A stretch of DNA of 64,000 nucleotides, taken from Styela clava. Lineage: Eukaryota. The position numbers and the translations under genes were made by a program. Of this stretch, positions 1,480 through 62,985 are shown one piece after another. Position 1 is the stretch's first letter. The number at the start of each line of letters is the position of its first letter. The notes under the pieces were generated by a model. It saw only the letters and a list, made by a program, of their open reading frames with translations. It searched no databases and was not told the origin of the DNA. The stretch lies in contig NC_135250.1 of the NCBI RefSeq assembly GCF_964204865.1, positions 25,482,001-25,546,000 on the forward strand, written 5' to 3'.

Positions 1480-4400
1480 TCAGGCGTTGTAAGATTCGTA
1501 AGCTGTTTCCACTTGTGTTTGCTTAGTTGTCGCAGGCAGAGCTTGTTCGTAACCGGCAGTTTCTTGCAGGACATTTGATGATGATGGTTGTTCGTAAGCT
1601 GATTCCACTTGTGTTTGCTTAGTTGTCGCAGGCAGAGCTTGTTCGTAACCGGCAGTTTCTTGCAGGACATTTGATGATGATGGTTGTTCGTAAGCTGATT
1701 CCACTTGTGTTTGCTTAGTTGTCGCAGGCAGAACTTGTTCGTAACCGGCAGTTTCTTGCAAGACATTTGAATATGATGGTTGTGAAGCTGGATTGTTGGG
1801 AGGAGTTGCTAATTAATTTAAAGAATGTAATTAGCAACCACAGAACAAACAAAAATCGATTTAAAATACTTATCTTGTTAGAAATCAGATCTAAGTGAAC
1901 CTGTGGTAGACAGTGTGTTAAAATAATAATTTTTTAAATAAAATATCTCAGTTTTTTTCCATCACTTCATAGAAGGTATGTTCACAGACCTAGCTCTTTC
2001 AAATTTTTAGTAATTTAATGGGCGTGACTCCTAGTAGGGCTTTAATTTTATTCACTTTTTATTTGCGGTGGCATTCCAATTTTGTATAAACTCGAGATAT
2101 TCAAATTGTATTGCCCCACTATTAGAACCTGTATTGATTGATAAACGTTTTCTATCCCATCAACATTGATGGCATGTGTTTATCATTGAAGTGGAGTTAC
2201 AACTTTTATTGTGACCGTATGCTGTTGTGTTTATACACTTTGAATGACACTTCGAATTTGATTTTATGGGAATAATATTTTATACATCAGTTCTGATTAT
2301 TTCTCACTACCTTTTTCTTCTATAGTTTCGTAATTATGTTCTTTTACTTCTGCCTTTTCCTTCAAATTCTTTATTTCTTTCTTCGATTTGTATATGATCC
2401 AGACAGAGACGACCAAGAAGACGAAAGGAATGAGAAAACCAATCACAAAACTGATGATGTTGAACTCGAACGCTTCTTTTTCTAAAACAAATACGTTACT
2501 CTGATTTCCCGTTGATATTTAAAGGTTTTGAGATTATAGTTTTATTAAAATTAGCAACATCATCTCTAGAATTACAAAGATAGTATATAACGTTCACAAT
2601 AAAAGAACACTTTATTCTTCTTTTAATTCTCAAAACTATTTGCTTGTTATCTTGTGTTGTTTGAAATTTGCTAATTTTTTTCATAATCTGGCTTTGAATT
2701 AACCAAATCTGAATATTTGTTATTCTTACCGGTATCGTTCTTAGCAGTAGTTTCTTGTTCACCTTGTTTCAACGTTATAGAGGGGCTTTGACTGAAATTT
2801 ATTTGGTCACCAGAGGGCGTGGAATAAACTATCGAGACACTGAAGTAAAATAAGTTATATTATGCATTGCGAAAATAAATTTCTCAAATGAAATAGGTAT
2901 ATATTATATTTGATTTGATAGCACCATTAAATAAGTAAATCAATCTAATTTGACGTTAACATATATCTTTACTGTCTGTCGGTTTTGAAATAGCATTATA
3001 TTAATACCAAAACTTTCAATTAAAAAATTAAAAGTCTATGATGATCTATATAACTCTAAGATATATATAGAATACCTGAACATCTTTTTATCTAATTTTT
3101 TGTTCCTTCCTGTGAATAAAATTTCTTTTCCAGAACTTTCTTCATTTTGTATCCCTGCTTTTCCGGTATTTATTACGTCACATGTTGTCATTGATTCATC
3201 ACCGAGTGTAATATTCATTCGCTTATCGTTCATGCTAAAATATTTTATTCAATGTAGAATAGAATATGATATGTTATGCAGGAAATATCGCTACTGCTCG
3301 AGACAATAGAAAAACCGCGTTGCAACGACGCATACAGGTATTTACACCTTGAAACTTTTCAAAATACATCTATGGTGGTACGAACATATGCAGTATCAAT
3401 GTATCTTCTTGCATGTGCGTTGTATGCCCATCCAATAGCCCAAAAGTATTGGAGTAAAGTATTCGTAGTACAATGCGTTTCGTTATAGTTTTTAGAAAAA
3501 ATCAACGTCAAAAATCTTATAAATTTATACCGAAATATCGCCGTTGTCCTGATATATTACGTAATACCTACATTGCCCTGGTACCGATTGCGAATAAATC
3601 TTTTATTCGATTAGTTAATCTTAATATCGCCAATAAACTTTCAATCATTTTCTTATGTTTCATATTTCAGGCAAAGTTTACAAATCATGTTTAACTAAAA
3701 CGCTTAATTAAATAATCACGCAATATAATTTTCTATAAATAAAAACTATTTACAACCTTGAAACAGGTATTGCTTTAGCAATATACTTATCACCGCTCTC
3801 TGTGTTGTTAATATTTATCATGTCAGTCAAGGAGAAGGCCACGTCGTGTTCCTTCAAATTTGTGCGTACAAGTACGAATATGCAACTGTAAATTAATAGA
3901 TTATAGATTATACAATAACAGAAATTGTACCGACATCTTGTTTTGTTGAAGAATAAAGTTCATATTGAAAAATGATACTAATCAAAATTAATCAGAACTT
4001 TCGTGTCTTTTAAGCCGAGTGATTATATTGGTACAGGAGAGGAATAATATACCTAATACGATATATGAACAGGCACAATTGATTTTTTTTTCAGGCTAAT
4101 AGGAAGATGAATGTACTACCTTTATCGTCGATATATTATTTTCTACTCTGTTGCATTTAGCTTACCTGACAAGGCCATTAGTCTCATCTGGTGCTTGTAT
4201 TCCGAGTTTTTTGAATCCACATACGCTGCTAACTAGGTTATCTTCAAAACTATCAGGCGGAAAAACCTTTGTGGGAGCTAAAATACAAGACAGTGTTTAG
4301 TCAAAGGCATTACGATATCCTTGATTTTTTCTTCAGGATTCACATTTTTGCTGCAAACAGCGTTCTGCAAACGTGTCTAATTATCGTTTCAATTTGAAAA

Positions 4401-7400
4401 TTGATACATATTTAGAACGCAATGACTTACGCAACTTCGCATATCTTGGGTTAATCAGAGTTGTTGAGTAGATTAGTGATTACAAAATTGAATACACAAA
4501 CATTGAATTCTGAATATACCTCTAGGTTTTCCAAGACAACTGCCAGTAACAGATAAAATTTGACCAAATCCAGCACAACTGAATATTTTGATTGAAGCGG
4601 AATAGTTACGATTTGATTCTGGTTGAAACGAATACACGGATGATGACGTCACGTTTATTAGTTTCATGTCTGTCTTCAAGTTTGAATCTCGTGAGGAAGC
4701 CAGGGTTGAAGTTAGATTCAGTTCCTATTAATCATGAGATAAGTAATTACATCCGAAAGTCACTAAAAATGCTCTGAAAATTGATGTCAAATAAGGATGT
4801 TGAAGATAACGTAAAACCTTCCAGCTGATTGGAATATGAATTGGATATAAATTACTAATAAACAAAAAACAAATGTGCAATTTATATCAGCGGACCAAAA
4901 CAGATCTACGATCGTAAGTATAAACAGTCAAACTTCACGACTTAATGTGGACTTCATGATACACGTTGGGATTCTAAATTCAATTGACATATATTCAACC
5001 AAAGCTGTGTGTTTCGGATAATGTGAGTCAAAATAAAAATATTGCTTACCACAGTATATGGATCACCAGTCTCTGTCTTGTTAGATAAGATCCAAGAGAT
5101 GACGCAAGTTTGTGTATTCTTGTATTGTATAATAGACGACGATTCTGCAGATAACATTGCTCCCCCTGTTGTTGCGTTTCGGAAAGTAGAATATTTGGTT
5201 GGACAGTTATCTTTTGTTGCACATGCAGTAATCTGACAAAAGATATTTATATAGGCATTTTAATAACGAAAGTATAAATGGGGCAGTAAACTAATTTAGC
5301 CTTACAGGTAAAGGCGATCTTAAAAAGAGAGACCTTCTTCCACAGATATTCGCATGAAATTTATGCGGAACAATCGATGTGAACAATATAGTAAATCGTT
5401 ACTGCTTACTTTGATTGTATAGGTTGTGGTAGCCGACAAACTGGTTATTGTGGTTGACTGTTTCTCAGATGTTGGTGAATCCACCCATCTTGTTGATCCG
5501 CCTGAGGTCGAACTTACTTCTATCCTGTAAAACAGATGTGAGTTTATGCTGGCATTAATGCAAGTAACAACGGGTAGCAATATGCGTAATGGTATTGGGT
5601 CGTGACCAGAATGACAGATTTACGTTTTGACTTTTAGTAATACCTTTAATAAATTTAACAATGTAACTCGAGCAGCTCCAGCCGTTTTCTCAAATGACTT
5701 TATAACATTGTTGTCAAAACGAGTATTTACTCGGATTTGTCTAGAGGCCTGTTTCGTGTAAAAGAAGCACATAAACTAAATCTTGTGGATATATCAAATT
5801 ATTCATAAAGATGAACTCACTTGTGTGGGAATCCAACAGCATTTATATGTGGTTGCCATGAGATGATCAAGTTAGGGTTGCAGTTGTTATTTGATATTTG
5901 ATAGATTGTGGGATTTCCAGCCACTGGAAAAGTTAATACCAAAAACATAGCTGACAGAGATTACAAAAAGCAGATATCGGTATTTATATTCACCTTCATA
6001 TGATCCTGTTTTACCATGTTTCCAACTGTTGCCGTTTCGAAAATAACAATCATAAGACCCTTCAACTGCAATATTTGCGTTTTGCAAATCCAATGTTGCT
6101 GATCCAGTTTGTATCGTTTGATAAACTCTATTTGTAGTTGCGGTTGATACTTTGTTAGATGCTTTGTGCCATTCGAATTGTATTGCAGTGCTGCATTCTG
6201 TCGCAGAACATCTTTTCTGATTTCCGTTGATTGTTTGTATTCTAACGAACGGGCCTGGAAACACTGAAGCAGAATTTGTGAAACTTGAAGCCGTAAATAA
6301 CACAAATTGGTTTAGGATATGAAAACTATGTTGATTACTTTGGTTCATGCATGCAAAAACACTAAACTTTGAAAGTACCATAATTATATTTTTAGCAAAT
6401 AAAAGCATTTTTGAGTTGATACTATTAGGGCAACTCTGTTTGTTACAAAATTTCAATTAAGTGATAGAAGCGCAATAATTATATTACAGGCAATCAGTGG
6501 CACCGAAAGACAATACTTGTATCGTATAATTGTATTGATGCGACCTGCGGTTTCAATAGAATATTCCTAATTTGACATGTACTTTAACTCATATTTAATT
6601 GAGTGCTAGCTTATGGGACAGGAAGGTGATATTAATATTGGAGTTTCGTTATCTGATATATATCTGATTTTTGCTTTATTGTTTTCTTAGATAGAACCTA
6701 TGCAACTTGATACGTTTCCTTTACCTTCAGTTGAGCAAGCTTGCATATTCAGAACACTTGTACGATATCAGACAAATTTACGACAAAGCTAGAAAACCCA
6801 TGAGAATGTCATTATGAGGACGAGTTATACAATTCTGTTATCAAAACATAGTCATATAATGAATTCATTGAATAATGAATCATCAATGATACCTTTCTTT
6901 CAAATTGAGTCAAAAATAGAAAACCGAGTATCACCTTTCTGGCAAATGTAGTAGAAGTTTTCATCACAAGATACATCAACCCACTCATACCTTTCTCTTC
7001 CAACTGACAAACAGTCTTCAACAGCAGTATTTTGTGTAGTCTCACCATTTGGTTGATCATATTTCCTGATAAATTGACAAGCCTAATTAATTAAGTCTAA
7101 AAATTATGCAGGCTCTGATGAACTAATCTTAACAAAATTTTTTAACAAGATGGTGGTATTTCTCTTTACTATAATATTGATAATAAAAAAAACTGCATGG
7201 TATACGAGATCAAAAAACTAATTCGCTTAGTAAATAATATTATTTTTTTATTTTATTTTTGCAACTTTTCTAAATAAAATTGAAAAACAAACCAGTTTTG
7301 ATATCCTGTTTCTCCTCTCATTATCACATCAGTACCATCCTGCCATTTCCAATCTCCTTCTCTAGCTATGTCATTTCCTCCGATGTAAAATGTGTTATCA

Positions 7401-8591
7401 CTACCCTGTATGCTAAGAATATAAAAACTTTCTTAGTTTTTTTTTTTTTTAAGAAAATACCGGAGCGATCAATTGAAAATTGAAAAAACGATTGAGAGAA
7501 GAGCTGAAATATACCACGGAGCGCTAAGATAACTAAATAGCCTTTGTGTGATGAAGCAAAGTAGAAAAACGTTGATTATGCCAGGTAGTCCACAGTTAGT
7601 TCTGGTGTTTTGTAAACTTGAATGTATCTGTTTAATTAGTAATTACTGAAAAACTCATTGCGTATAACAGTTTTTGTTCAAGTTTCTTCAAATATACGAA
7701 CTTGTAAGCTATGAAAGTTTCATTGATTCTTGCTTTTAATCTATATACGAATAACTACTGCTTCAATGCAGCATAACTGAGGTAAATAAATCGCTGTGTA
7801 AAAATTAATATAAATACTGAGGCTGATTTTACCATTATAATGTGAAAATAATGAAGTACATATTTGGAACATGCTTCCTGAAAGTAAAATAAATCTTTAG
7901 CTCTCGTACATCACTGTACAAACAATATCCTATTTCAACTCACGTATATAATAAGTGTTTAATTTACATTGAGATGGTACAAACAACAGTGAGATAATCA
8001 ATCCCACCTATTTAGTGCTAAAATTTCATTCAATACATAGAACAATTCACATATTAAATAACACCAAGATATCAAAAATAAGTTACTTTTTAACTCACTG
8101 GAATGCTGAATTAATGACTGTCGTCATTCTCTCATTAACAACTTTAGCCAAGTAACCTCCCAATCCTTCACAGGAAGATTTTGCGCTGTTGTAAGTTTTA
8201 CGTTGTTTGAAGAAAAGCAGCTCGAATCCTTCAACACATTCTTTCTTCCAGGGATCTGAAACACAACAGTATTTGTAATTGTTCCAGTTGGTATATCAGT
8301 TCTAATATTGAACAATGAATATAAAGTTATTGAAGATGCTATTTGTTTTATTCAACAAAGAAGTCATTTTTAAACAAATTGAAATAGAATACTCCAACTG
8401 CTTCTAATGTTGTTGTTTTCTTCGTTTATTATAAAGAAACAGTTGTATTTGTTTGAGTGTAGGAAAATTCTATTCATCAACAAAAGTTTTGATAAGATAT
8501 AAATGGTTTTATACATAAAATTCAACTTACATTGAGCTGAAGCTCTTGTTATGAGGATCGAGACAAACAGCACCAAACTTGTAAGATTCAT
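1480..8591 (-). CDS. Receptor copy A (long form, apparently intact, 15 exons, 773 aa): SP-CTLD-Ig-FN3-FN3-juxtamembrane module-TM-Tyr-repeat tail
   Basis: Manually spliced exons (minus): 8591-8531 (MNLTSLVLFVSILITRASAQ), 8255-8099, 7412-7293, 7065-6935 (CTLD: C..C, YIGGND..EGDWKW.DG, YQNW..QPN, EDC, WVDVSC, YICQ), 6263-5994 (Ig: C..W..L.L.N....EGSYDC), 5923-5821, 5524-5410, 5232-5050, 4724-4520 (FN3-like), 4277-4166, 3885-3757, 3234-3076, 2839-2763 (juxtamembrane), 2481-2311 (TM IISFVIGFLIPFVFLVVSVWIIY), 1808-1480 (tail). All introns are GT-AG and phases are compatible; total 2322 nt with no internal stop. Confidence 0.85.
1490..1775 (-). repeat. Coding minisatellite, 96-bp unit x3 (SNVLQETAGYEQALPATTKQTQVESAYEQPSS)
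   Basis: Near-identical 96-bp units visible directly; matches ORF 1480..1761. Confidence 0.95.
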
Positions 8592-12953: not shown

Positions 12954-13274
12954 CAGGGCTACTCAACTAGCGGACCGCGGTCCGAATCCGGACCTTTCGA
13001 GTATTTGATTCGGAACGCACTTAATTCTTCCTTTTGAATCATTAGCCCCACATTTAAAGTTTCATTTAACAAAATGACTTTTATTGTTTTATATATATAT
13101 ATATGTGAAAAGAACGATAACACCATAGTAAAAAATCTTGATTATCTGGTATCATTATCCGTTCGAGAAAGTGCGCGTTTACGGATGCCAAAATATAATT
13201 TCTGGAAACACCGGACCCAAATAATTTTGAAGTTTTGTATGTGGATCTTCGGTAAAAATAGTTGAGTAGCCGTG
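12954..13274. mobile_element. hAT-like MITE in the last intron of the collectin-like gene
   Basis: TIRs CAGGGCTACTCAACTA / TAGTTGAGTAGCCGTG; degenerate 8-bp flanks. Confidence 0.65.
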
Positions 13275-17700: not shown

Positions 17701-18066
17701 TTTCGATCATAATTTCTTTAACTACCAGATTCAAAAATTTTTCAGGCAACAGATTTATGGTTCAAAATAAGATGGAATCCGAATACTTTATGAGTTTGAC
17801 TTGTATGAAGTATTATCTATTTTGATATTCATATCCGAAAAAATATTTCATAAAAAAAAAGGAAATTAAATAATGGGTCAAATTACCAAATCGACACAAA
17901 TGACAAGCGAGGGTTTTTTCAATAATAAAGTTTTCGGTATTGTCTTACTATGCAGCAAGATATTGAAATTGATCGGAAGATAAGTAGGCTGATTGATTGA
18001 TAGAAAAAACTTTAAATGGGTAAGGCTACAGTTGCCTTACTTCATATGCAGGCTATGGGTGCATTA

Positions 18067-24000: not shown

Positions 24001-24172
24001 AGATGAGTTTTTTTTTCATTTATTATAAGAAGCTATTTCATTTGTCAGAGAGAAGAAACTTATTTATGAACAAAATGTTTGACAGGATAAATTCAACAGG
24101 ATTCAACTAACCTTGAGCTGAAGCACTGGTGATGAGGATTGAAAACAATATCGCCAAAACTGTAAGATTCAT
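18067..24172 (-). pseudogene. Receptor copy B (short form, pseudogene)
   Basis: Same exon series as copy D (SP from 24172, CTLD exons, Ig, FN3 exons, TM ~18918-18748, tail from ~18323). Lesions: 1-bp deletion giving TAA at 23746-23744 in exon 2; exon-4 donor GT>AT at 22092-22091; 1-bp deletion in the Ig exon near 21160 plus Trp>Cys; tail cut off in the third repeat near 18070 by unrelated sequence. Confidence 0.8.
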
Positions 24173-37900: not shown

Positions 37901-37988
37901 TGAGCTTCCTGATTAGTTGCGTTGTAATAGAATGCACAAACTTAACCTAACTCACAAGTCGTTTGAATGAATTCATGTAAAATACATG

Positions 37989-50042: not shown

Positions 50043-50390
50043 TAAACTCAATATCTATTCGCATATTATAAAAAGAAAAAAAGGTTGGTCTTCATAAAAC
50101 ACTCGGTGATGTTGTGACTAACAATGTCTTAGCTGTTGGTTAGAATATTTCAATCGTGATGGTGTCAATGGATAAAATTCTTACAAGTCGACTCAATTAT
50201 CAATCTCCATCCAATTTCTCTGAAGCTGATATGAATATACTAATATCATACGGCATGTATTCTCATTTTCAATTATGAAGAAAATTGACTTAAAATTAGC
50301 CACGTAGTAATTCGATGATATGCCCAAAATGCCCATCTTCCGTCGGCCAGGGTTTTTTTATTGATATGGATGTCTTAATCTGGTGCTCTC

Positions 50391-50600
50391 GAAATTTGCG
50401 TACCAAGATGGCGTACACCGGAACGTAGTATGTGTACCGCATGTGTAATTTTATTCCAATTTTCCATATTTTAGTTCTATTACGAGTTCGAGGACTAGCC
50501 AAGTGACTACCGTAGTATTTGTATCTGAAATTAAGGCTTAACCCTAACCTGGTACATATACTACGTTCCGGTGACCGCCATCTTGGTTCACATACTTCCC
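50391..50600. mobile_element. MITE with ~37-bp inverted repeats
   Basis: ACCAAGATGGCGTACACCGGAACGTAGTATGTGTACC (50402-50438) pairs with 50551-50587; internal CCCTAACC. Confidence 0.65.
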
Positions 50601-51029
50601 TTAATCTTACAAAACGTCACTAGACATTTTCAAATCACTTGATTATTTAAGTGAGTATTTAGCGAAACCACGTGATACCTATTTTTATTGTTCATTGCAT
50701 ATTCACTCGTCTTTGTTATTTCGTTTTTATTTTATTTTATTTTTTATTATATCTGAGGGTGTTGTTAGCTCCATAGCTAAACAATCCGTCATTCTCAACT
50801 CATAATATTTAAACATTTATCGTAACAACTTCGTCAATTCGTGATTTTTTGTGTAATAGATCCATTAATTCTGATTCTTAATATGAAAAATCATCATTCA
50901 ATTCTGAACCTTCGCTGACGCTGCAAATATCCCTATTATGTAAATCATTCTCGTACTTTTACTGGAAAAAGCAAATGTGACTTATTACGTTGATGTTATT
51001 ACCTTGGCTTATTACTTTAACTTATTATG

Positions 51030-51197
51030 CAGAGTGTCCATAAAGTCCCTTTACAATTTCAATTTTTGTTATGAAGCCAGTTTATATCTTAAGTATTTTT
51101 ACTTCATTTAATACATCTGTGAGGGCCAAAATAAAGTGGGGCATCGGTAAATTTCCTCTTGCAATTTTAAAAATGTCAAGACCTTATGGACACCCTA
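51030..51197. mobile_element. Tc1/mariner-like MITE
   Basis: TIRs CAGAGTGTCCATAA / TTATGGACACCCTA in AT-rich flanks. Confidence 0.55.
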
Positions 51198-51544
51198 TAT
51201 AATGAGTCAAAAATCAAAGGAATTTTCAAAGCTCACAAGTTTAAATATTTAAACAAATATATAGCCTACTTGTACAAAAACTGTTTTATACATAATTGAT
51301 TTTATAGTAATTATTAGCTATTATCAGTTAACCTGCCTGCGGATTATACTAGCAATATTCTTTATAGGCTATCTGGTTTTATCAACATTTTTTAATAGTA
51401 CTTTGCTTTATCACGCAAAGGCTATTATGTTATTTTAATACGTCTATAGTCTCAACTTTTCAGTCAGTACTCTTTACGATGTAAACTAAGGCTCTGGTCT
51501 TTACTTCAAAATAAAAAAAATGATAAGGTTTATATATTCTAAGC

Positions 51545-51660
51545 ATATATATAAGGTGATGAAAACACCATTCATATTAGTGAAACGACCTAGCTAGAGA
51601 GGGACATTGGAAATGGCAGGATGGTACTGATGTGATAATGATAGGTGAAGTTGAATATTA
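51545..51660 (+). pseudogene. Isolated decayed CTLD exon-3 fragment of the receptor family
   Basis: Acceptor ttctaag followed by frameshifted sequence reading ...DLAREGHWKWQDGTDVIMIGEVEY, homologous to exon 3 (DIAREGDWKWQDGTDVIM). Confidence 0.7.
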
Positions 51661-54600
51661 ATATATACCAACCAACCAAATTATTCTCTAAAAAGTCAAA
51701 GTATATACATACTGCATTTCTAAAAATGAGGTAGATTTTAGCTTAAGATAGTTCATCCAATTGGTGACTAGTACTTAACAAGTAATCCAAAAGGAGGAAT
51801 TCCCCTACGACAGACAATGGCATTATTGAAGTCTCGCTTGCCGTTGAATTTGCTACACTCTTGTGGATACTACACGACATGAAAGTTATAAAAAATAATT
51901 TAAGAAGCAATTTTTTTTTTTTTCAATTTTTTTAAATATAGTTGAGGACCAAATCAGTTTTGATATCTTACTTCACCTCTCATCATTTAAAATTCAAATT
52001 TATAAATACGAGAAAATTGTTTGCCGATCAATAATGGAATGGGTTCAATATGCTCAATTCTAACTTTCGTTCCGCCAATGATCAAGAATTGATTTTTTGC
52101 TGAGTTGCATTCTAGTCGGAACTGGTGTTGAGGAGTGACAACGGTACTGCTGTACTGGCTTGTTCACGTTTTAACCTGTGGTGCAGTGCAAGCTTAGCAA
52201 TCGCCGTTGTAATACTTAGCAAGATAGGTAGTAATTCATTCCAAAAGCATAAAGTTAAACTGTGGATAAGTACGCCGAACAATCGCCGAGTGCATAATGA
52301 AACAATTCGCTGGCATTGAATGAATACCAATAAGGAGCCTACATATGATGTAAAGATGAAAAGGACGTTAAGGCAGCATGACAGAATCGAAATATAATGA
52401 ATCAGGTTTATGAAGAAAAGTAATTGAAATTCAACTAACGCAGATAGGCCTACAGTAAAAGTTTTTATCGGTACTGCAAAATCTACCTATATATTGAATG
52501 ACAACTCAAACAATATCTTTGGTATTATATATGCATAAACAGTTTTATGGTCTTATAATTTGACCATGCCAATTCGCAACGTTTTTAACATTTTTTTAAT
52601 GGCGTGTTATTGTTTTGTTCTGTGTGCATATCGTTTTAAGAATATCGGTATTGGCCTCATCATTTACAGACCTGTACACGCGTGATTGGTGTGTTTCCTG
52701 TGAATTGCTTTTATAAGTGTCTGTGCACATAATTTACCAACATAGCTTCGATTAAAGTTTGTATTTTGCTTCTTTTAAACCAATGCCAAATCAGTTAAGT
52801 TATTCGTGGCTTCCGACTATTCTCGTTAGTCGTTACTTTGTCACATTGTATTTGTATCAGATTGAATAGATCATTATCAGCTTAAGTATTTTAAAAGTAG
52901 CCTACAACAGCCTGAACGTTCAATACGTTCGCGTATTTTTTGCGTGTTTATTTCTGGCCCATTCCTCGTTTAACAAAGTTTGTGTTTTTTGTTAGTGACT
53001 TGATCAAGCTACCAAGAATTGGACCAGTCCCTCCCACTATATCATCGGAAATGAAAAACTCAGTCTGATACCGGCATCAAATCTCAACAACACCTCTGTA
53101 ACACAACATAACAGCTATTTAAGTAAACATTGTTCACAGGTTGGGGGAATAGCTATATTTTGGATTGAGATTTCATGCGCAAATATTGCACTATCTCATC
53201 TATTACTATCAGGTGAAGAAAAATTAATATAATATTTACAACGTTGCTAGTTATTTGCGTCAAATCGGAAATCACTGTTATTCACGAAACCACAAGCTTC
53301 TTATGTCTTTTGGTTACTGCATGTCGAAACTGTACAAACAGTAGTGACACCTCGTAAAATGATTACAAGTTCACACCCACAATTCATTGAGTCACTTTTG
53401 TACATAAGACATGCATTGCTAAACCAACTGTATTTAATCTGTATATACACATTTAATATTAGATGTCAAAATCATATTGTTGAGCAATATAATGAACAAA
53501 TATAAATTTAATACGAAGCAAAAATAACATATATTTTAGTTTCATAGAAGATAATGTTTGAGATTTTTAAGATTGTTGTAAAACGAGTTTGTCAAATATT
53601 GTTTATCTGTTATTTTCCTTTTTCCACGTATATTTACAAATATTTGAAAGATCACATATACAGCACATGGAAGTTTTACACGACCCTGCTCAAATTTTGC
53701 TATATCACTTAAAACAGTTTTCATTCGGTGTAACTTATAAATAGCGAAATGCTTGTGCATGTCACATGTTTCCTGATTGCAGTAGACAGTGAAAATATTT
53801 TCACATTTAAACGCACCAACATGTATACATCTGAATAGAGGAGATTTTTTAATATATCAAGACTTAATTTCCATATAAACTTCTCTGAGTACGTTCGTGA
53901 GAAACGTTTGCAATATGTAAGTTTTTACCTTTATTTAATTACACATGGCCAACTTCCCGGAAATTTAAAATAAGTAACAAACTCAAATCTGAATTTGCGA
54001 TCTTTTCAACTGCTTACTCTATTTATACTTCTTGAAAACGTATATATATGTCTCAGTCACAAGTATTTCCAAGCACAATATTGTTCTTCAATGGAAATTA
54101 GAGGTATCGGTGCTGGATGTTCAAGTGATATTAACTTTTGCTCAATCTAATACGATTATAATAATAGGTCTGTACAAATAAAGCAGCAACATTTACAAAT
54201 GAAAATAAAGAAATCAACAAAGTAAACAAAATGTCGCAGTAATGTGAAACACTCTTTAAAGTCAAAATTTCCTTTTCTGAGAAAATACAATAAAAATTTA
54301 GAAACTTACGATAGACGGATAGATCGTCAGCGATACCCATAATTAATTAAAATGCGAAACAAAAATGTCTAGTGAAAATGCAAAAAACAATAGAATTAAA
54401 CACCACATGGTTTAGCTTGAGGCATTTGCAGGACCTGGTAAATAAAAATCTCTAGCCTCAACTGGTGACGATTTGCAAAATTACAGACAGGCGCATCACG
54501 TACCTGAGGAAATCCCATGTCCGATGAAATGCGTGCATTTCAGACATAACATCCAATTACTACTATAAGAATAACGGACTATTTTTAGTCGAAAGAAGCA

Positions 54601-55081: not shown

Positions 55082-58000
55082 TCAGGCGTTGTAAGATTCG
55101 TAAGCTGTTTCCACTTGTGTTTGCTTAGTTGTCGCAGGCAGAGCTTGTTCGTAACTGGCAGTTTCTTGCAGGACATTTGATGAAGATGGTTGTTCGTAAG
55201 CTGACTCCACTTGTGTTTTCTTAGTTGTCGCAGGCAGAGCTTGTTCGTAACCGGCAGTTTCTTGCAGGACATTTGATGATGATAGTTGTTCGTAAGCTGA
55301 CTCCACTTGTGTTTGCTTAGTTTTTGCAGGAAGTGGTTGTTCGTATCCGGCAGTTTCTTGCAAGACATTTGAAGATGATGGTTGTGGAGCTGAATTGTTG
55401 GAAGGAGTTGCTAATTAATTGAAAAAATAAAACTATCAACCACAAACAATTAAAATTCGATTTAAAATACTTATCTTGATAGAAATCAGATCTAGTATGT
55501 AAACCTGTGATAGACAGTGTGTTAAAATAATAATTATTTAAATAAAATATCTCAGTTTTTTTCCATCACTTCATAGAAGGTATGTTCACAGACCAATCTC
55601 TTTCAAATTTTTAGTAATCTAATGGGCGTGACTCCTAGTAGGGCGTTAATTTTATTTATTTTTTATTTGAGGTGGCATTCCAATTTTGTATAAATGCGAA
55701 TTATACAAATTGTATTGTCCCACTATTAGAACCTGTATTGATTGATAAACGTTTTCTATCCCATTAACATTGATGGCATGTGTTTATCATTGAAGTGGAG
55801 TTACAACTTTTATCGTGACCGTGTTCTGTTGCGTTTATACACTTTAAATGACACTTTGAATTTGATTTGTATGGGAATAATATTTTATACATCAGTTCTG
55901 ATTAATTCTCACTACCTTTTTCTTTTATAGTTTCGTAATTGTGTTCTTTTACTTCTGCCTTTTCCTCCAAATTCTTTATTTCTTTCTTCATTTTGTATAT
56001 GATCCAGACAGAGACGACCAAGAAGACGAAAGGAATGAGAAAACCAATCACAAAACTGATGATGTTGAACTCGAACGCTCCTTTCTCTAAAACAAATACG
56101 TTACTCTGATTTCCCGTTGATATTTAAAGGTTTTGGGATTATAGTTTTATTAAAATGAGCAACATCATCTCTAGAATTACAATGATAGTATCTAACGTTC
56201 ACGATAAAAGAACACTTTATTCTTCTTTTAATTCTCATAACTGTTTGCTTGTTATGTTGTGTTGTTTGAAGTTCGCTAATTTTTTTCATAATCTGGCTTT
56301 GAATTAACCAAATCTGAATATTTGTTATTCTTACCGGTATCGTTCTTAGCAGTAGTTTCTTGTTCACCTTGTTTCAACGTTATAGAGGGGCTTTGACTGA
56401 AATGTATTTGGTCACCAGAGGGCGTAGAATAAACTATCGAGACACTGAAGTAAAATAAGTTATATTATGCATTGCGGAAATAATTTTCTCAAATGAATTA
56501 CGTATATATTATATTTGATTTGATAGCACCATTAAACAAGAGAGCTATGCTCAAATATATGGACACGTAGCGCCACCCAATGGCAATAATTTTGATGACG
56601 TCATAGCGAAAAAAAAAGTAATAGCCTTCTGGAGAAAAATTTTATCTTCAACCACTGAAACTTTCAAAGCAATTGGTCCAGTATTCGAAGAGAAAAGCGA
56701 CTTTTTAAAAACGTGTCAAAGAACAACAACAAGGACAACAAGAACAAGAACAACAACAACATAATATTGAAACGATCGTTATGTCCACTACGTGTCCAAT
56801 AAGTAAATCAATCTAATTTGACGTTAACATATATCTTTACTGTCTGCCGGTTTTGAAATAGCATTATATTAATACCAAAACTTCCAATTAAAAAATTAAA
56901 AGTCTATGATGATCTATATGACCCTAAGATATATATAGAATACCTGAACATCTTTTTATCTAATTTTTTGTTCCTTCCTGTGAATAGAATTCCTTTTCCA
57001 GAACTTTGTTCATTTTGTATCCCTGCTTTTCCGATATTTATTACGTCACATGTTGTCATTGATTCATCACCGAGTGTTATATTCATTCGCTTACCGTTCA
57101 TGCTAAAATATTTTATTCAATGTAGAATAGAATATGATATGTTATGCAGGAAATACCGCTGCTGCTCGAGACAATAGAAAAATCGCGTTGCAACGACGCA
57201 TACAGGTATATACACATTGAAACTCTTCAAAATACATCTATGGTGATACGAACATATGCAGTATCAAAGTTTCTTCTTGCATGTGCGTTGTATGCCCATA
57301 CTATAGCCGAAAAGTATTGGAGTAAAGTATTCGTAGTACAAAGCGTTTCGTTATAGTTTTTCGAAAAAATCAACGTCAAAAATCTTATAAATTTATACCG
57401 AAATATCGCAGTTGTTCTGATATATTACGTAATACCTACATTGCCCTGGTACCGATTGCGAATAAATCTTTTATCCGATTAGTTAATTTTAATATCGCCA
57501 ATAAACTTTCAATCATTTTCTTATGTTTCATATTTCAGGCAAATTCTACAAATCATGTTTAACTAAAACGCCGATTTAAATATTCACGTAATATAATTTT
57601 CTAGAAATAAAAACTATTTACAACCTTGAAACAAGTATTGCTTTGGCAATATACTTATCACCGCTCACTGTGTTGTTAATATTTATCATGTCAGTCAAGG
57701 AGAGGGCCACGTCGTGTTCCTTCAAATTTGTGCGCACAAGTACGAATATGCAACTGTAAATTAATAGATTATACAATAACACAAATTGTACCGGCATCTT
57801 ATTTTGTTGAAGAATAAAGTTCATATTGTAAAATGATACTAATCAAAATTAATCAGAACTTTCGTGTCTAATAAGCCGAGTGATTATATTGGTACAGGAG
57901 AGGAATAATATACCCAATATGATATATGAACAGGCACAGTTGATTTTTTTTTTCAGGCTAATAGGAAGATGAATTTACTACCTTTATTGTCGATATATTA

Positions 58001-61000
58001 TTTTTACTCTGTTGCATTTAGCTTACCTGACAAGGCCATTAGTCTCATCTGGTGCTTGTATTCCGAGTTTTTTGAATTCACATACGCTGCTAACTAGGTT
58101 ATCTTCAAAACTATCAGGCGGAAAAACCTTTGTGGGAGCTAAAATACAAGACAGTGTTTAGTCAAAGGCATTATGATATCCTTGATTTTTGCATTATGAT
58201 TCACACTTTTGCTGCAAACTGCGTTCTGCAAATGTGTCTAATAATCGTTTCAATTTGAAAATTGATACATATTTAGAACGCAATGACTTACGCAACTTCG
58301 CATATCTTGGGTTAATCAGAGTTGTTGAGTAGATTAGTGATTAAAAAATTGAATTCACAAACATTGAATTCTGAATATACCTCTAGGTTTTCCGAGACAA
58401 CTGCCAGTAACAGATAAAACTTGACCAAATCCAGCACAACTGAATATTTTGATTGAAGCGGAATAGTTACGATTTGATTCTGGTTGAAACGAATACACAG
58501 ATGATGACGTCACGTTTATAAGTTTCATGTCTGTCTTCAAGTTTGAATCTCGTGAGGAAGCCAGGGTTGAAGTTAGATTCAGTTCCTATTAATCATGAGA
58601 TAAGTAATTACATCCGAAAGTCACTAAAAATGCTCTGAAAATTGATACCAAATAAGGATGTTGAAGATAACGTAAAACCTTCCAGCTGAGTGGAATAGGA
58701 ATTGGATATAAATTACTATTAAACAAAAAACCAATGTGCAATTTATATGAGCGGACCAAAACAGATCTACGATCGTAAGTATAAACAGTCAAACTTCACG
58801 ACTTAATGTGGACTTCATGATACACGTTGGGATTCTCAATTCAATTGACATATATTCAACCAAAGCTGTGTGTTTCGAATAATTTGAGTCAAAATAAAAA
58901 TATTGCTTACCACAGTATATGAATCACCAGTCTCTGTCTTGTTAGATAATATCCAAGAGATGACGCAAGTTTGTGTATTCTTGTATTGTATAATAGACGA
59001 CGATTCTGCAGATAACATTGCTCCCCCTGTTGTTGCGTTTCGGAAAGTAGAATATTTGGTTGGACAGTTATCTTTTGTTACACATGCAGTAATCTGACAA
59101 AAGATATTTATATAGGCATTTTAATAACGAAAGTATAAATGGGGCAGAAAACTAATTTAGCCTTACAGGTAAAGGCGATCTTGAAAAGAGAGACCTTCGT
59201 CCACAAATATTCGCATAAAATAAGTGCGGAACAATCGATGTGAACAATATAATAAATCGTTATTGTTTACTTTGATTGTATAGGTTGTGGTTGGCGACAA
59301 ACTGGTTATTGTGGTTGACTGTTTCTCAGATGTTGTTGAATCCACCCATCTTGTTGATCCGCCTGAGGTCGGACTTACTTCTATCCTGTAAAACAGATGT
59401 GAGTTTACGCTGGCATTAATGCAAGTAACAACGGGTAGCAATATGCGTAATGGTATTGGGTCGTGACCATCATGACAGATTTACGTTTTGACTTTTAGTA
59501 ATACCTTTAGTAAATTTAACAATGTAAATCGAGCAGCTTCAGCCGTTTTTTAACAATGTGGTCAAAACGAGTATTCCCTCGGATTTTTCTAGAGGCCTGT
59601 TCCATGTAAAAGATGACATATAAACTAAATCTTGTGGGTATATCAAATTATCCATAAAGATGAACTCACTTGTGTAGGAATCCAACAGCATTTATATGTG
59701 ATTGCCATGAGATGATCAAGTTAGAATTGCATTCGGTATTTGATATTTGGTAGATTGTGGGATTTCCAGTCACTGTAAAGTAAATACCAAAAACATAGCA
59801 GGCAGAGATTACAAAAAGCAGATATTTGTATTTATATTCACCTTCATAAGATTCTGTTTTACCATGTTTCCAACTGTTGCCGTTTCGAAAATAACAAGTA
59901 TAAGACCCTTCATCTGCAATATTTGCGTTTTGAAGATTGAAGGTTGCTGATCCAGTTTGTATCGTTTGATAAACTCCCCGTGTAGTTGCGGTTGATACTT
60001 TGTTAGATGCTTTGCGCCATTCAACTTGTGTTGCAGTGCTACAGTCTGTTGCAGAACACCTTTTCTGGTTTCCGTTAATAGTTTGTATTCTAACAAAAGG
60101 GCCCTGAAACACTGAAGCAGAATTTGTGAAATTTGAAGCCTTAAATAACACAAATTTTTTTAGAATAAGAAAAACTAGGTTGATTACTTTGGTTCATGCA
60201 AGCAGAAACACTGAACATTGAAAGTACCTTTATTATATTTTTAGCAAATAAAAAAAACATTTTTGATATAATACTGTTAGTGCAACTTTATTTGTAACAC
60301 AATTTGAATTAAGTGATTGAAGCCCAATAATTCTATTAAAAGCATTCAGTGGCACCGAAAAACAATACTTGTATCGAATCCTTGTATATGTGATCTGTAT
60401 TGATCAGTTCCAATTGAATATTCCTAATTTGACAATCTATTTCAATTCGTATTTAATTTACGATCAATAATTAAGTACTAGCTTATTGGACAGGAAATTG
60501 ATATATTTGAGTTTTGCTGGGACAGTGCGGTAGTTACTGTAGTGTTCTGGGTACTATAGCTTTTCCACAGTTCAAGCTTCCTCCATAATATCGTATGATT
60601 TTTGTGGAATTGTTGTTAAAATATTATGTTTGAACTTCGTGTGCATATGTTTGAGTTTTGCTCTATTGTTTCTTTAGATAGGAGCTATGCAACTTGTTAC
60701 GTTTTTTTTACCTCCAGTTGTGCACGAAAAATCAATTAATCATACCTTTCTGGCAAATGTAGTAGAAGTTTGCATCACAAGATATATCAACCCACCGATA
60801 CGTTTCTCTTCCAACTACCAAACAGTCTTCAACAGCAGTATTTTGTGTAGTCTCACCATTTGGTTGATTAGATTTCCTGATAAATTTAGAAGCCGAATAA
60901 ATTATTCTAAAAATTATGCAGGCTCTAAGCATTTAATGTAAGAAATAGTTAGTGACAAGTTGTTACGCTGATATAGCTCCTAAATATTTTTCGAACAGGG

Positions 61001-62985
61001 GAAGTATTGATATACTACATATGAAATTAGACTAAGTTTTTGCTTGGCATAGTTTATTCAATTGCCCCTAACATATAGCTAGTGAGGTTTGTCAGGATTT
61101 CACCTCCGACAAAATGAATTTGACTACGACGGATAATAAATAGCATTATTGAAGTTTTGCCGTGGTATTTCTCTTTACTATAATATTGATAATAATGAAT
61201 ACTGCGTGGTATACAAGTTCTGAAAACTATTTCACGCAGAAAATATATTGTTTATTAAATTCTTTTGTAACTTTTTTAAATAAAGTTGAGAAACACACCA
61301 GTTTTGATATCCTGTTTCTTCTTTCATGATCACATCAGTACCATCCTGCCACCTCCAATCTCCTTCGTTAGCTATGTCGTTTCCACCGATATAGAAAGTG
61401 TTATCACCACCTCGTATGCTGAGAATTTAAAAACCTTATCAGTTTTTTTAAAGAAAATAACGGAACCATAGATTAAAAATTGAGAAAACGACTGAGAGAA
61501 GAGCTGAAACATACCATGGACGCGCCAAGATACCTAAATAGCCTTTGTGTGAGGAAGCAAAATAGTATTAAAAAATGCTGAATCCACAGTAGGGCTGGGC
61601 ATTTCGAATCGAATATTCGAATCGAATCGAATAGTAAATTATTCGAATCGGTTCAGAGCTAAATTTCGAATCGCCGCCATCTTGTTTTTATCTTTCCGCT
61701 AATGGTCGAGGTGAATTCCCCAATTTTTTTCTCATTAGAGTCATATTTTTTTAACGAAATTCTAACATATGACTATTTTCTGTAGTGAGGTATTGATAAA
61801 ACGTGTTTGTTATTCTGTGTGAACGCTCAGTAATCTATCTGCGTGATTTATTCTATGTCTTCAGTAATTCATTTGTTGAGAGGACCAATTACTATATATA
61901 TTAAAGTCGCTTACAATTATATATTTTCAAGTATTCGAGATTCGATTCGAAAAAAATTATTCGATTCGATTCTGAAATCACAAGGTATTTGAAAATGCCC
62001 AGCCCTAATCCACAGTTATTTCTGGTGTTTAGGTGAGATTTGCAAATTTGAATGTATATGTTTAATTAGTAATTAGTGAAAAACTCATTGCGTATGACAG
62101 TTTTCGTTCAAGTTTATTCAAATATACGAACTTGTAAGCTATGAAAATTTCATTGATTCTTGCTTTCATTCTTTTTACGAATAACTACTAGCTTCAATAC
62201 AGCATATCCAAAGTAAATAAATTGCTGTGTAGAAATTAACAAAATAGTGAGGCTGATTTTACGATTATATTGTGAAAATAATGAAGTACATATTTGGAAT
62301 TATCCCGATCCTTCAACATAATTCCTATAAGTAAAATAAATCTTTAGCTCTCGTACATCACTGTACAAACAATATCCTATTTCAACTCACGCATATAATA
62401 AGTGTTTAATCTACATTGAGATGGTACAAATAACAGTGAGATAATTAATTTCATCTATTTAGTGCTAAAGTTTCATTCAACACATAGAACAATTCACATA
62501 TTAAATAACACCAAGATATCAAAAATTAGTTTCTTTTTAACTCACTCGAATGCTGAATTAATGACTGTCGTCATTCTCTCATTATCAACTTTAGCTAAGT
62601 AGCCTCCCAATCCCTCACAGGAATATTTGGCGCTGTTGTAAGTTTTATGTCGTTTGAAGAAAAGCAGTTCAAACCCATCAACACATTCTTTCTTCCAGGG
62701 ATCTGAAACACAACGGTATCTGGAATTGTAATCAGATTCAGATTTGAACAATTGAATAAATAACAATTCTCATTTATTAACATGAAATTTGAAGAATATG
62801 AGCTGAGGTTTTCTCATATATTATAGGAACATTTACATTTGTCCGAGAGAAAGAAACCTATTCATAAACAAAATATTGGACAGGAAAAAAGCAAATGGGT
62901 TTATTCATACAATATTCAACTAACCTTGGGCTGAAGCACTTGTGATGATAATCGAGACAATTATCACCAAAACAGTAGGATTCAT
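55082..62985 (-). CDS. Receptor copy F (long form, apparently intact, 15 exons, 773 aa)
   Basis: Exons 62985-62925, 62702-62546, 61418-61299, 60876-60746, 60111-59842, 59772-59670, 59385-59271, 59093-58911, 58585-58381, 58138-58027, 57753-57625, 57102-56944, 56444-56368, 56086-55916, 55410-55082. Exon lengths are identical to copy A and the frame is open; an in-frame upstream ATG lies at 62991. Confidence 0.85.
56537..56799 (+). mobile_element. 263-bp insertion, Helentron-associated (HINE/DINE-1-like) non-autonomous element
   Basis: Absent at the homologous site in copies A and C; no TSD; A/T-rich junctions; subterminal 11-bp inverted repeat TGGACACGTAG / CTACGTGTCCA; internal (ACA)n microsatellite. 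Confidence 0.6.
61590..62007. mobile_element. hAT-like MITE (418 bp) in intron 2 of copy F
   Basis: Perfect TIRs TAGGGCTGGGCATTT / AAATGCCCAGCCCTA; perfect 8-bp TSD ATCCACAG (61582-61589, 62008-62015); TTCGAAT subterminal repeats. Confidence 0.9.

What the first reader, a model, noticed from the sequence alone, without database searches (positions are those of the whole stretch)
1480..62985. Tandem cluster of lectin-Ig-FN3 single-pass receptors with tyrosine-motif tails: candidate undescribed innate-immune or recognition receptor family
Seen: six paralogs sharing one exon series that splices into SP-CTLD-Ig-FN3-FN3-(module)-TM-cytoplasmic tail with many Tyr motifs and no catalytic domain; three copies are intact and three are disabled or partial. 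Established: clustered, birth-and-death families with variable ectodomains and Tyr-based tails are typical of immune and allorecognition receptors (vertebrate KIR/Ly49/Siglec, Hydractinia Alr Ig+FN3-like receptors). Lectin+Ig combinations I know of (snail CREPs, Drosophila contactin) are secreted or GPI-anchored. Inference: I do not recognise this architecture as a named family, and it may be a diversified glycan-recognition signalling system. It is invisible in the ORF track because exons are 60-330 bp.
Basis: partly seen in the sequence, partly recalled or inferred. Interest (0 to 1): 0.9.

Follow-up and report, generated by a model that had tools for sequence, protein, structure and literature searches.

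The report
Phosphatase-less twins of sea-squirt lectin phosphatase receptors
The window holds a real, transcribed cluster of sea-squirt (Styela clava) membrane receptor genes with a lectin-antibody-like head and a tyrosine-rich tail; they are phosphatase-less copies of receptor tyrosine phosphatases that carry the same head, which looks like an undescribed paired-receptor arrangement of untested function.

Summary
Six minus-strand paralogs lie at 1480-62985.
- A and F are intact: 15 GT-AG exons, 784 aa.
- D is an intact short form: 11 exons, 603 aa.
- B is frameshifted, C lacks exons 1-4, and E is an inverted fragment.

RNA contigs from three studies show A's splice junctions. My model equals a RefSeq protein of Styela clava named only 'uncharacterized'.

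The architecture is signal peptide, C-type lectin domain (CTLD), Ig, FN3, FN3, a large FN3-like 'module', transmembrane helix (TM), and a 133-aa tail of 32-aa tyrosine repeats. The module plus the preceding FN3 best match human PTPRM FN3-4 (Z 14.5).

The new point is that the whole ectodomain is shared with tandem-phosphatase receptors (RPTPs) on the same chromosome: 70-79% identity in the head. Across four head lineages, a phosphatase form and a tail form are nearest relatives. One origin of the phosphatase forms is rejected (AU p 2e-30). All tail forms share one TM+tail cassette, found only in S. clava.

So these genes are phosphatase-less partners of lectin-headed RPTPs, probably a paired signalling system. 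An immune role and sugar binding are untested: dN/dS is 0.2-1.0, and the WND sugar-site Asn is lost.

First-stage readers of this scan noted the same family in the neighbouring window, and lectin-RPTP or paired systems on other pieces of this genome.

The parts
1480..8591 (-). Gene A (LOC144422822, P0136), intact long form, 15 exons, 784 aa
   Evidence: Open spliced frame. RNA joints. Identical to the RefSeq protein.
8531..8591 (-). A exon 1: start codon and signal peptide
   Evidence: ATG at 8591 and GTAAGT donor after 8531. Model helix 3-18.
6935..8255 (-). A exons 2-4 (8255-8099, 7412-7293, 7065-6935): C-type lectin domain
   Evidence: Pfam Lectin_C 6e-17. Z 16.5 to the SRCL, CL-K1 and DCIR lectin domains. 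QPN and EDC are kept; WND reads WVD.
5994..6263 (-). A exon 5: Ig domain, one phase-1/phase-1 exon
   Evidence: Weak Pfam I-set and Ig_3 matches. Joints 6263|6935 and 5923|5994. 51 matches in the genome.
5410..5923 (-). A exons 6-7 (5923-5821, 5524-5410): first FN3 domain
   Evidence: Weak Pfam fn3 match. FN3 fold matches, model 73-173, Z about 11.
4520..5232 (-). A exons 8-9 (5232-5050, 4724-4520): second FN3 domain
   Evidence: Joints 5232|5410 and 4723|5049. Part of the PTPRM FN3-4 match.
2730..4277 (-). A exons 10-13 (4277-4166, 3885-3757, 3234-3076, 2839-2730): the 'module', a large FN3-like domain of the RPTP membrane-proximal type; absent from the short forms
   Evidence: Together with the preceding FN3 it gives the top match of 48,161 chains: human PTPRM FN3-4, Z 14.5, rmsd 4.2, 216 of 225 residues aligned. 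Language-model look-alikes carry Fn3_PTPRU, score 0.85. Aligns to ascidian RPTP stalks.
2311..2481 (-). A exon 14: transmembrane helix and the membrane-proximal NYETI motif
   Evidence: Model helix 627-666. Joint 1808|2311. Motif scan.
1480..1808 (-). A exon 15: tail made of three 96-nt (32-aa) repeats carrying YSNV, YEQx and YESY motifs, then the stop codon at 1482-1480
   Evidence: Repeat 1495-1687 against 1591-1783 is 97% identical. Motifs. 44 matches in the genome.
55082..62985 (-). Gene F, intact long form, 15 exons, 784 aa, 90.8% identical to A
   Evidence: Exon-by-exon mapping, all AG/GT. Open frame.
38574..44399 (-). Gene D (LOC144425631, P0138), intact short form, 11 exons, 603 aa, no module
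   Evidence: Threads exactly onto P0138 with GT-AG introns.
17995..24172 (-). Copy B (LOC144425196), disabled short form
   Evidence: -1 frameshifts in exon 2 and in the Ig exon, and an AT donor at exon 4. The RefSeq model P0014 avoids them.
30060..34937 (-). Copy C, exons 5-15 intact, no signal peptide or lectin exons; the tail has two repeats
48102..51666 (+). Copy E, inverted decayed fragment (pieces of exons 11-15 and of exon 3)

Best explanation
The six copies belong to a Styela clava family of type I membrane receptors: signal peptide, C-type lectin domain, Ig, two FN3 domains, an optional RPTP-type FN3-like stalk domain, TM helix, and a tyrosine-repeat tail. The family arose from lectin-headed receptor tyrosine phosphatases (RPTPs) when the TM plus tandem-phosphatase part was exchanged for a TM plus tyrosine-tail cassette.

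Shown here:
- The heads of phosphatase forms and tail forms are nearest relatives in four separate head lineages.
- All tail forms share one cassette.
- Heads and tails have mosaic ages.

Inferred:
- A tail receptor and the RPTP with the matching head bind the same ligand.
- The tail is phosphorylated on NYETI, YSNV and YEQx (YxxP, and in some copies the ITIM-like SAYEQL) by a Src-type kinase, and docks SH2 proteins.
- The matched RPTP sets or ends that signal. Its phosphatase domains are PTPRA/E-like.
- This would be a paired system in which the counter-receptor carries the phosphatase itself instead of recruiting one through an ITIM.

The ligand and the biological setting (immunity, self/non-self recognition, settlement) are unknown.
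For: Gene models and transcription.

The same ectodomain occurs on RPTPs:
- P0131 and P0004 carry Lectin_C plus two Y_phosphatase domains with intact HCX5R.
- Identity of P0131 to gene A by domain: CTLD 79, Ig 70, FN3-1 73, FN3-2 60, module 43, TM 28%.
- The other pairs: P0145 (PTP) against P0146 (tail) 90/77/79/73%; P0265 (tail) against P0150 (PTP) 69.6% over the whole ectodomain; P0266 against P0148 64.6%.

Tree and cassette:
- Head tree: three PTP/tail sister pairs (100/100, 100/100, 85/94), and the RPTPs P0131 and P0147 sit inside the main tail clade. At least 4 changes of state are needed, and PTP monophyly is rejected at AU p 2.4e-30.
- The TM+tail cassette is 40-47% identical (TM and membrane-proximal part) and 66-97% identical (exon matches) between subfamilies whose heads share only 26-40%.

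Genome layout:
- PTP exons lie about 13 kb below the family's Ig exons at C1:26.29-26.39 Mb, with no tail exon between them.
- Tail exons are interleaved with PTP exons at 24.85-25.10 Mb.

Stalk and phosphatase affinities:
- The stalk matches PTPRM FN3-4, Z 14.5. Foldseek's top hits are RPTP sigma, delta and mu ectodomains and contactins.
- The phosphatase domains are closest to vertebrate PTPRA at 38-39%, and the RPTP's C-terminus has Y-S-N where PTPRA has Y-A-N.

Constraint and mosaicism:
- The tail is under constraint: dN/dS 0.41 between A and F. Its exon is 100% identical at protein level in three genes whose Ig exons are 68-69% alike.
- Between A and F, dS is 0.22-0.38 in the 5' half and 0.04-0.06 in the 3' half, and the introns show the same split.
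Against: - Nothing shows that a tail form and its RPTP partner sit on the same cell or bind one ligand.
- No phosphorylation data exist.
- The tail has no canonical ITAM or ITSM, and gene A has no ITIM.
- The RPTP partners are RefSeq predictions that I did not check against RNA. One of them (P0145) is a truncated model.
- The nearest RPTPs with the window's head type lie 0.8 Mb away, not next door.
- The pairing pattern could be a by-product of frequent unequal exchange in a repetitive region, without functional coupling.
- The tail cassette was seen only in S. clava, but other styelid proteomes may be missing from the databases.
Confidence: 0.6

Rival explanations
1. They are stand-alone innate-immune or allorecognition receptors. 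A diversified lectin-Ig head senses glycans or non-self, and the tail signals through ITIM- or ITAM-like motifs. The kinship with RPTPs would be history only.
For: - Clustered birth-and-death family of about 26 loci with pseudogenes and fragments.
- Signalling motifs vary between paralogs: ITIM-consensus SAYEQL in D, F and B; YSNV lost in F and C.
- Sugar-loop indels and an EPN/QPN switch.
- In the same ascidian family, Botryllus uses clustered IgSF receptors with tyrosine-motif tails for allorecognition (PMC12582321).
Against: - No domain-wide positive selection: CTLD 0.34, Ig 0.28-0.65.
- The Asn of WND is lost, so canonical Ca-dependent sugar binding is doubtful.
- No ITAM, and no expression or challenge data.
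- It does not explain why heads stay matched to RPTP heads in four lineages.
Confidence: 0.2
2. They are decoys or dominant-negative partners. The phosphatase-less forms would compete with RPTPs, or dimerise with them, for ligand. The tail would serve only sorting or endocytosis through YxxI/V signals.
For: - Same heads as the RPTPs.
- NYETI and YSNV fit the YxxPhi sorting consensus.
- The short forms lack the stalk domain.
Against: - The tail is long (63-133 aa), repeated and conserved. Its repeat number is kept in A, D and F, and three genes have identical tail exons. That is more than a sorting signal needs.
- dN/dS of the cytoplasmic part is 0.41.
Confidence: 0.12
3. They are cell-adhesion or developmental guidance molecules (for example in larval settlement or metamorphosis), like the vertebrate Ig-FN3 RPTPs and contactins that their stalk resembles, with no role in recognising non-self.
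For: - Fold matches to RPTP sigma, delta and mu, LAR, contactins and neogenin.
- The S. clava genome paper links expanded lectin genes to metamorphosis (PMC7540406).
Against: - Adhesion and guidance genes are usually single-copy and conserved across species. This family has dozens of young copies, pseudogenes, and no orthologue found outside S. clava.
Confidence: 0.08

Closest known systems
Receptor-type protein tyrosine phosphatases: R2B (PTPRM/K/T/U) for the stalk, R4 (PTPRA/E) for the phosphatase domains of the paralogs
   Same: - Type I topology with an Ig-FN3 ectodomain.
- The membrane-proximal FN3 pair best matches PTPRM FN3-4 (Z 14.5).
- S. clava paralogs with the same ectodomain carry two PTP domains closest to PTPRA (38-39%), and have a basic furin-like site in the last FN3-like domain.
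   Different: - The window genes have no phosphatase domain at all.
- Their head starts with a C-type lectin domain, which none of the vertebrate RPTP ectodomains matched here has.
- The TM helix is unrelated to that of the RPTP paralogs (13-31% identity), and the furin-like site is absent.
Paired immune receptors of vertebrates (KIR, LILR, SIRP, PILR, Siglec-5/14, CEACAM1/3)
   Same: - Near-identical ectodomains joined to different signalling parts.
- Clustered genes with birth and death.
- Recurrent exchange between the two kinds (concept as in PMC3533184).
   Different: - One partner here is itself a tandem phosphatase rather than an ITIM receptor that recruits SHP-1/2.
- The other partner carries its own tyrosine tail rather than pairing with an ITAM adaptor through a charged TM residue.
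- Opposite signalling is not shown.
Myeloid and NK C-type lectin receptors (DCIR, Dectin, Mincle, Ly49)
   Same: CTLD fold, Z 15-16.5; membrane-bound; tyrosine motifs in the cytoplasmic part.
   Different: - Those are type II proteins with a C-terminal lectin domain and no Ig or FN3. Here the protein is type I with an N-terminal lectin domain.
- The WND Asn is replaced.
Botryllus schlosseri BsCLT (Pancer 1997) and the Fester/FcoR allorecognition families
   Same: - Same ascidian family (Styelidae).
- BsCLT has a CTLD followed by an Ig domain (PMC4944128).
- FcoR are clustered IgSF receptors whose tails carry ITIM, hemITAM and repeated 'core' tyrosine motifs about 30 residues apart (PMC12582321). 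The tail repeat here is 32 aa.
   Different: - As described in PMC4944128, BsCLT has only these two domains.
- FF and FcoR are described only as IgSF; no lectin or FN3 stalk is mentioned for them.
- Sequence homology to either could not be tested, because no sequence was available by reference.
Ascidian lectin-headed RPTPs (Ciona LOC100183702, Phallusia A0A6F9DQN0, many S. clava loci)
   Same: Lectin_C, sometimes with Ig, plus tandem PTP domains. Their stalks align to residues about 250-760 of gene A at 22-28% identity.
   Different: They keep the phosphatase domains. They are database predictions that no paper found here describes.

Membership tests
Receptor-type protein tyrosine phosphatase | At least one cytoplasmic PTP domain with the HCX5R catalytic loop | tested here: not met
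   - Pfam finds no Y_phosphatase in P0136, P0138 or the other tail forms.
- The cytoplasmic part is a 133-aa repeat tail.
- There is no PTP exon in the window.
- The paralogs P0131 and P0004 do have two such domains.
Receptor-type protein tyrosine phosphatase | Type I ectodomain of Ig/FN3 modules homologous to RPTP ectodomains | tested here: met
   - 34-57% identity over the whole ectodomain to the S. clava RPTPs P0147, P0148 and P0150.
- PTPRM FN3-4 is the best structural match.
C-type lectin receptors (sugar-binding CTLD) | CTLD fold with its conserved cysteines | tested here: met
   - Lectin_C 6e-17.
- Z 16.5, rmsd 2.6, 127 residues aligned to SRCL.
- Profile hits to the mannose receptor family.
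C-type lectin receptors (sugar-binding CTLD) | Complete Ca2+ site 2: EPN or QPD, a Glu, and WND | tested here: inconclusive
   - QPN (A) or EPN (D) and the Glu of EDC align with CLEC4F's QPD and EDC.
- WND is WVD in A, and WID, WLD, WTS or WRD in relatives.
- Four of the five ligands are kept. Binding was not assayed.
ITIM/ITAM immunoreceptors | Cytoplasmic ITIM ([SIVL]xYxx[IVL]) or ITAM (YxxL/I x6-12 YxxL/I) | tested here: inconclusive
   - No ITAM or ITSM in any copy.
- ITIM-consensus SAYEQL in D and F, and SAYDQL in B; none in A or C.
- Ser at position -2 is the weakest form of the consensus.
Paired receptors | Two receptor kinds with closely related ectodomains and different signalling parts | tested here: met
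   Four head lineages each hold a PTP form and a tail form.
Paired receptors | Shared ligand and opposing signals in the same cell | not testable with these tools
   This needs binding assays, co-expression data and signalling assays.
Botryllus FcoR / BsCLT | Detectable sequence homology | not tested
   No sequence was available by reference. None of the five same-architecture (single-Ig) hits of the Ig-profile search was from Botryllus, and the ten small hits that I looked up were unrelated Ig proteins, nine of them named and from vertebrates or a tick.

The most novel reading that the evidence does not exclude
A paired-receptor system of a new design. One ligand-binding head (lectin-Ig-FN3) is kept in step, by repeated exchange, between a receptor that is itself a tandem tyrosine phosphatase and a receptor whose tail is a repeat array of phosphotyrosine docking sites. 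A single ligand would then bring substrate and phosphatase together. It would be a direct-enzyme counterpart of ITIM/ITAM pairing, in the invertebrates closest to vertebrates.
Probability: 0.4. Interest if true: 0.85.

Novelty: new variant of a known kind. Interest (0 to 1): 0.66.

Why it matters
- Tunicates are the closest invertebrate relatives of vertebrates. How they build receptor repertoires without antibodies or MHC is an open question.
- This work turns an anonymous gene cluster into a concrete hypothesis. Dozens of receptors share their heads with receptor phosphatases, and at least four independent head-sharing pairs exist.
- If the pairs work together, this is a different wiring of the activating/inhibitory logic of NK and myeloid receptors, with the phosphatase built into the counter-receptor.
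- It would also give the large, unexplained expansion of lectin-headed RPTPs in ascidians a function.
- The hypothesis can be tested directly with heterologous expression, phosphopeptide pull-downs and single-cell RNA data.

Tried and rejected
- **Per-exon Pfam scans** gave only sub-threshold hits. Domains became clear only with the full RefSeq proteins.
- **Ab initio choice of splice sites** by consensus score was ambiguous at several junctions. RNA contigs settled them.
- **Joined model.** The joined frame was checked only inside the sandbox. It proved identical to a database protein (P0136), which I then used by its id.
- **Ig-exon profile against 1.8 billion representatives.** It found same-architecture proteins only in S. 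clava; the other hits are generic multi-Ig proteins.
- **Module identity by Pfam.** Pfam does not recognise the module or the second FN3 in any of 15 members.
- **Fold search with the full 784-aa model.** The list filled with lectin domains. A second model of a headless paralog was needed.
- **Positive selection.** Looked for and not found: A-F by domain, and A, F, C and D pairwise for Ig, FN3-1 and FN3-2. The higher divergence of the 5' exons is matched by their introns and by dS, so it reflects age or gene conversion, not selection.
- **Family or RPTP exons between the copies.** None at E 1e-6.
- **Literature.** Searches for lectin-headed RPTPs or this receptor family in ascidians found no description.
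- **Tail forms as alternative 3' ends of RPTP genes.** Rejected: the nearest PTP exons are more than 300 kb from the window.
- **RPTP models as read-through of a tail gene.** Rejected: no tail exon lies between their Ig and PTP exons.

Full report
**What is in the window.** The window is C1:25,482,001-25,546,000 of a 377-Mb animal genome with 33% G+C. RefSeq names on identical proteins identify the animal as the ascidian Styela clava. A self-comparison shows tandem units 66-93% identical. Translated searches with copy A's exons find the same exon series five more times.

**Gene A.** I laid RNA-type contigs of four runs from three studies on 1450-7440.
- They list CT..AC joints, which are GT..AG on the minus strand, for ten introns: 1808|2311, 2839|3076, 3234|3757, 3885|4166, 4277|4520, 4723|5049, 5232|5410, 5923|5994, 6263|6935 and 7064|7292.
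- Joints with one or two stray letters cover two more introns: 2479|2730 and 5523|5821.
- A loose end at 7412 continues into exon 2.
- With the two obvious 5' junctions, this gives 15 exons, all introns GT-AG, and an open frame of 784 aa ending at 1482-1480.

I joined the exons only inside the sandbox, to check the frame. The model proved identical to P0136, a RefSeq protein (LOC144422822, 'uncharacterized'). P0136 was returned by a search seeded with P0002, a hit of the Ig-exon profile search. I used it by id from then on.

**The other copies.**
- F (62985->55082) has 15 exons of the same lengths, all AG/GT, an open frame, and 90.8% identity to A.
- D (44399->38574) threads exactly onto RefSeq P0138 as 11 GT-AG exons. 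It lacks exons 10-13, so it is a short form.
- B has -1 frameshifts in exon 2 and in the Ig exon, and an AT donor at exon 4. Its RefSeq model P0014 changes frame and truncates exons to stay open.
- C has flawless exons 5-15 but no exons 1-4.
- E is an inverted, decayed piece.

**Architecture.**
- Lectin domain: Pfam gives Lectin_C at 6e-17. The predicted structure matches solved C-type lectin domains at Z 16.5.
- Ig and first FN3: these are weak but consistent Pfam hits across 13-15 of 15 family members.
- The rest of the ectodomain is invisible to Pfam.
- A second model, of the headless paralog P0141 with a 19-sequence alignment, reached pLDDT 76.5.
- In a search of 48,161 solved chains that does not lean on Foldseek, its best match is human PTPRM domains FN3-4: Z 14.5, rmsd 4.2 Å, 216 of 225 residues, model residues 170-431. 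That range is the second FN3 plus the 'module'. The match stands 2 Z units above the next one.
- Foldseek independently ranks RPTP sigma, delta and mu ectodomains and contactins first.
- Language-model look-alikes of the module carry Pfam Fn3_PTPRU (score 0.85, 182 of 256 features).
- So the module is a large FN3-like domain of the RPTP membrane-proximal type.
- A TM helix follows (model helix 627-666), then a 133-aa disordered tail with 9 Tyr.

**The tail.**
- It is a coding repeat of 96 nt, or 32 aa.
- The motifs are NYETI in the TM exon of all copies, YSNV, alternating YEQ[VAP] and YEQP/L, and a terminal YESY/YETY.
- There is no ITAM or ITSM.
- An ITIM-consensus SAYEQL is present in D and F, and as SAYDQL in B. 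It is absent from A and C. YSNV is lost in F and C.
- From general knowledge of SH2 specificities (not tested here): YEEI-like motifs suit Src-family SH2 domains, YxN suits Grb2, and YxxP suits Crk, Nck or Abl.

**The key relationship.**
- The Ig-exon profile search also returned P0004 and P0131 (LOC120335088). These have the same signal peptide, CTLD, Ig, FN3, FN3, module and TM, followed by two Y_phosphatase domains (4e-148) with intact HCX5R loops.
- Identity of this RPTP to gene A by domain is CTLD 79, Ig 70, FN3-1 73, FN3-2 60, module 43 and TM region 28%.
- In the genome, three sets of PTP exons at C1:26.29-26.37 Mb lie about 13 kb below family Ig exons, with no tail exon between them. 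These are therefore true RPTP genes and not read-through models.

**The pattern repeats in other head lineages.**
- The divergent RPTP P0145 and the tail form P0146 share 90/77/79/73% over CTLD, Ig, FN3-1 and FN3-2. P0146's TM region matches the window genes instead.
- At C1:24.85-25.10 Mb, tail exons of the window type alternate with PTP exons, although the window's Ig exon does not hit there.
- Two stretches fetched from that region encode heads 55-84% identical to the RPTPs P0148 and P0150, joined to TM and tail exons 66-97% identical to gene A's.
- The RefSeq tail forms P0265 and P0266 are 69.6% and 64.6% identical to P0150 and P0148 over the whole ectodomain, but only about 40% identical to gene A.

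**The head tree.**
- I built a maximum-likelihood tree of the head (CTLD to FN3-2) from 20 RefSeq proteins, leaving out second models of the same locus.
- It places a PTP form and a tail form as sisters three times (supports 100/100, 100/100 and 85/94).
- It nests the RPTPs P0131 and P0147 inside the main tail clade (100/100).
- At least four changes of cytoplasmic type are needed.
- Holding the PTP forms together costs 877 log-likelihood units (AU p 2.4e-30).

**Origin and range.**
- The PTP domains are closest to vertebrate PTPRA (38-39%).
- Many S. clava RPTPs, and predicted proteins of Ciona and Phallusia, combine Lectin_C with tandem PTP domains.
- The stalks of these proteins, and that of a Clavelina RPTP that has Ig and FN3 but no Lectin_C hit, align to residues about 250-760 of gene A at 22-28% identity.
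- The lectin-headed RPTP class is thus ascidian-wide.
- The TM+tail cassette was found only in S. clava, as were all whole-protein relatives. This comes with the caveat that other styelid proteomes may not be in the databases.

**Evolutionary dynamics.**
- Between A and F, dS and intron divergence are high in the 5' half (dS 0.22-0.38; introns 0.09-0.22) and low in the 3' half (0.04-0.06; 0.03-0.06). The genes are therefore mosaics of different ages.
- Three genes have tail exons 100% identical at protein level although their Ig exons are only 68-69% alike.
- dN/dS is 0.34 for the CTLD and 0.28-0.65 for Ig. For FN3-1 it is 0.45-1.03, the top value resting on 10 against 3 changes. For FN3-2 it is 0.23-0.62, and for the tail 0.41.
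- This is relaxed purifying selection, with no domain-wide diversifying signal.

**Sugar site.** Aligned to CLEC4F, gene A keeps QPN and the Glu of EDC but has WVD for WND. Relatives have WID, WLD, WTS or WRD. Canonical calcium-dependent sugar binding is doubtful, though not excluded.

**Interpretation.** The well-supported part is that these genes are phosphatase-less paralogs of lectin-headed RPTPs, with an exchanged TM+tail cassette and heads kept matched to RPTP heads in four lineages. The functional reading is inference. It holds that a tail receptor and its matched RPTP see the same ligand, so that the tail's phosphotyrosine docking is set by the partner phosphatase. Immune or allorecognition use is possible. 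Botryllus, in the same family, uses clustered IgSF receptors with tyrosine-motif tails for allorecognition (PMC12582321). But it is untested here.

**What is known.**
- No paper in the searched library describes this family or lectin-headed ascidian RPTPs.
- The S. clava genome paper reports only expanded 'collectin/MBL' genes (PMC7540406).
- A CTLD followed by an Ig domain was published for Botryllus BsCLT in 1997, as cited in PMC4944128.
- After reaching the RPTP result, I found first-stage notes of this scan proposing lectin-tipped RPTPs and paired systems on other pieces of this genome, and the same family in the neighbouring window. These are unchecked AI notes, not independent evidence.

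**Verdict.** The finding is a new variant of known kinds (RPTP-derived, paired-type receptors), of good interest. The function remains open.

Noticed in passing
window 13084-13575 (- strand): A separate C-type lectin exon lies between copies A and B and is unrelated to the family (Pfam Lectin_C 0.002; no family protein hits it). It has close copies at five places in this cluster and a 7-kb tandem array on C18:16.03-16.08 Mb.
   Followed up: partly
G000 C1:25563888, 25608413 versus window 1483-1806: Three genes have tail exons 100% identical at protein level while their Ig exons are only 68-69% alike. This points to gene conversion or a very recent cassette exchange.
   Followed up: partly
L001 (C1:24889500-24899499) and L002 (C1:24960500-24970499): A second receptor subfamily: heads 55-84% identical to the RPTPs P0148 and P0150, joined to the window-type TM and single-repeat tail. 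These genes are interleaved with RPTP genes over 24.80-25.17 Mb.
   Followed up: partly
window 17995-24172 (copy B): The RefSeq model XP_077970822.1 (P0014) stays open only by reading lectin exon 2 in another frame and cutting the Ig exon in half. The locus looks like a pseudogene.
   Followed up: yes
window 30060-44399 (copies D and C): Headless copy C lies directly downstream of intact D, on the same strand, with all splice sites intact. A D-head to C-body transcript is conceivable but could not be tested, because the reads call was already spent.
   Followed up: no
window 5896-6022: One RNA-type contig (run X1, no differences from the window) runs unspliced through the 70-nt intron 5. This is retained intron, pre-mRNA or DNA carry-over.
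   Followed up: no
whole genome G000: There are at least 152 PTP-domain exon matches, in clusters on C1, C2, C3, C6, C10, C13, C14 and C17. Many RefSeq RPTPs of S. clava carry Lectin_C, so receptor phosphatases are strongly expanded in this species.
   Followed up: partly
P0131, P0004 and P0002, module region (paralogs outside the window): The RPTP paralogs and the tail form P0002 have a basic furin-like site (RKRKKRS / KRRKRS) in a loop of the last FN3-like domain. The window copies have lost it.
   Followed up: no
G000 C1:25.23-25.64 Mb: The Ig exons at 25.23-25.32 Mb are all on the + strand and those at 25.35-25.63 Mb nearly all on the - strand (one + hit at 25.414 Mb); the stretch between is mixed. 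The cluster looks like two inverted blocks.
   Followed up: no
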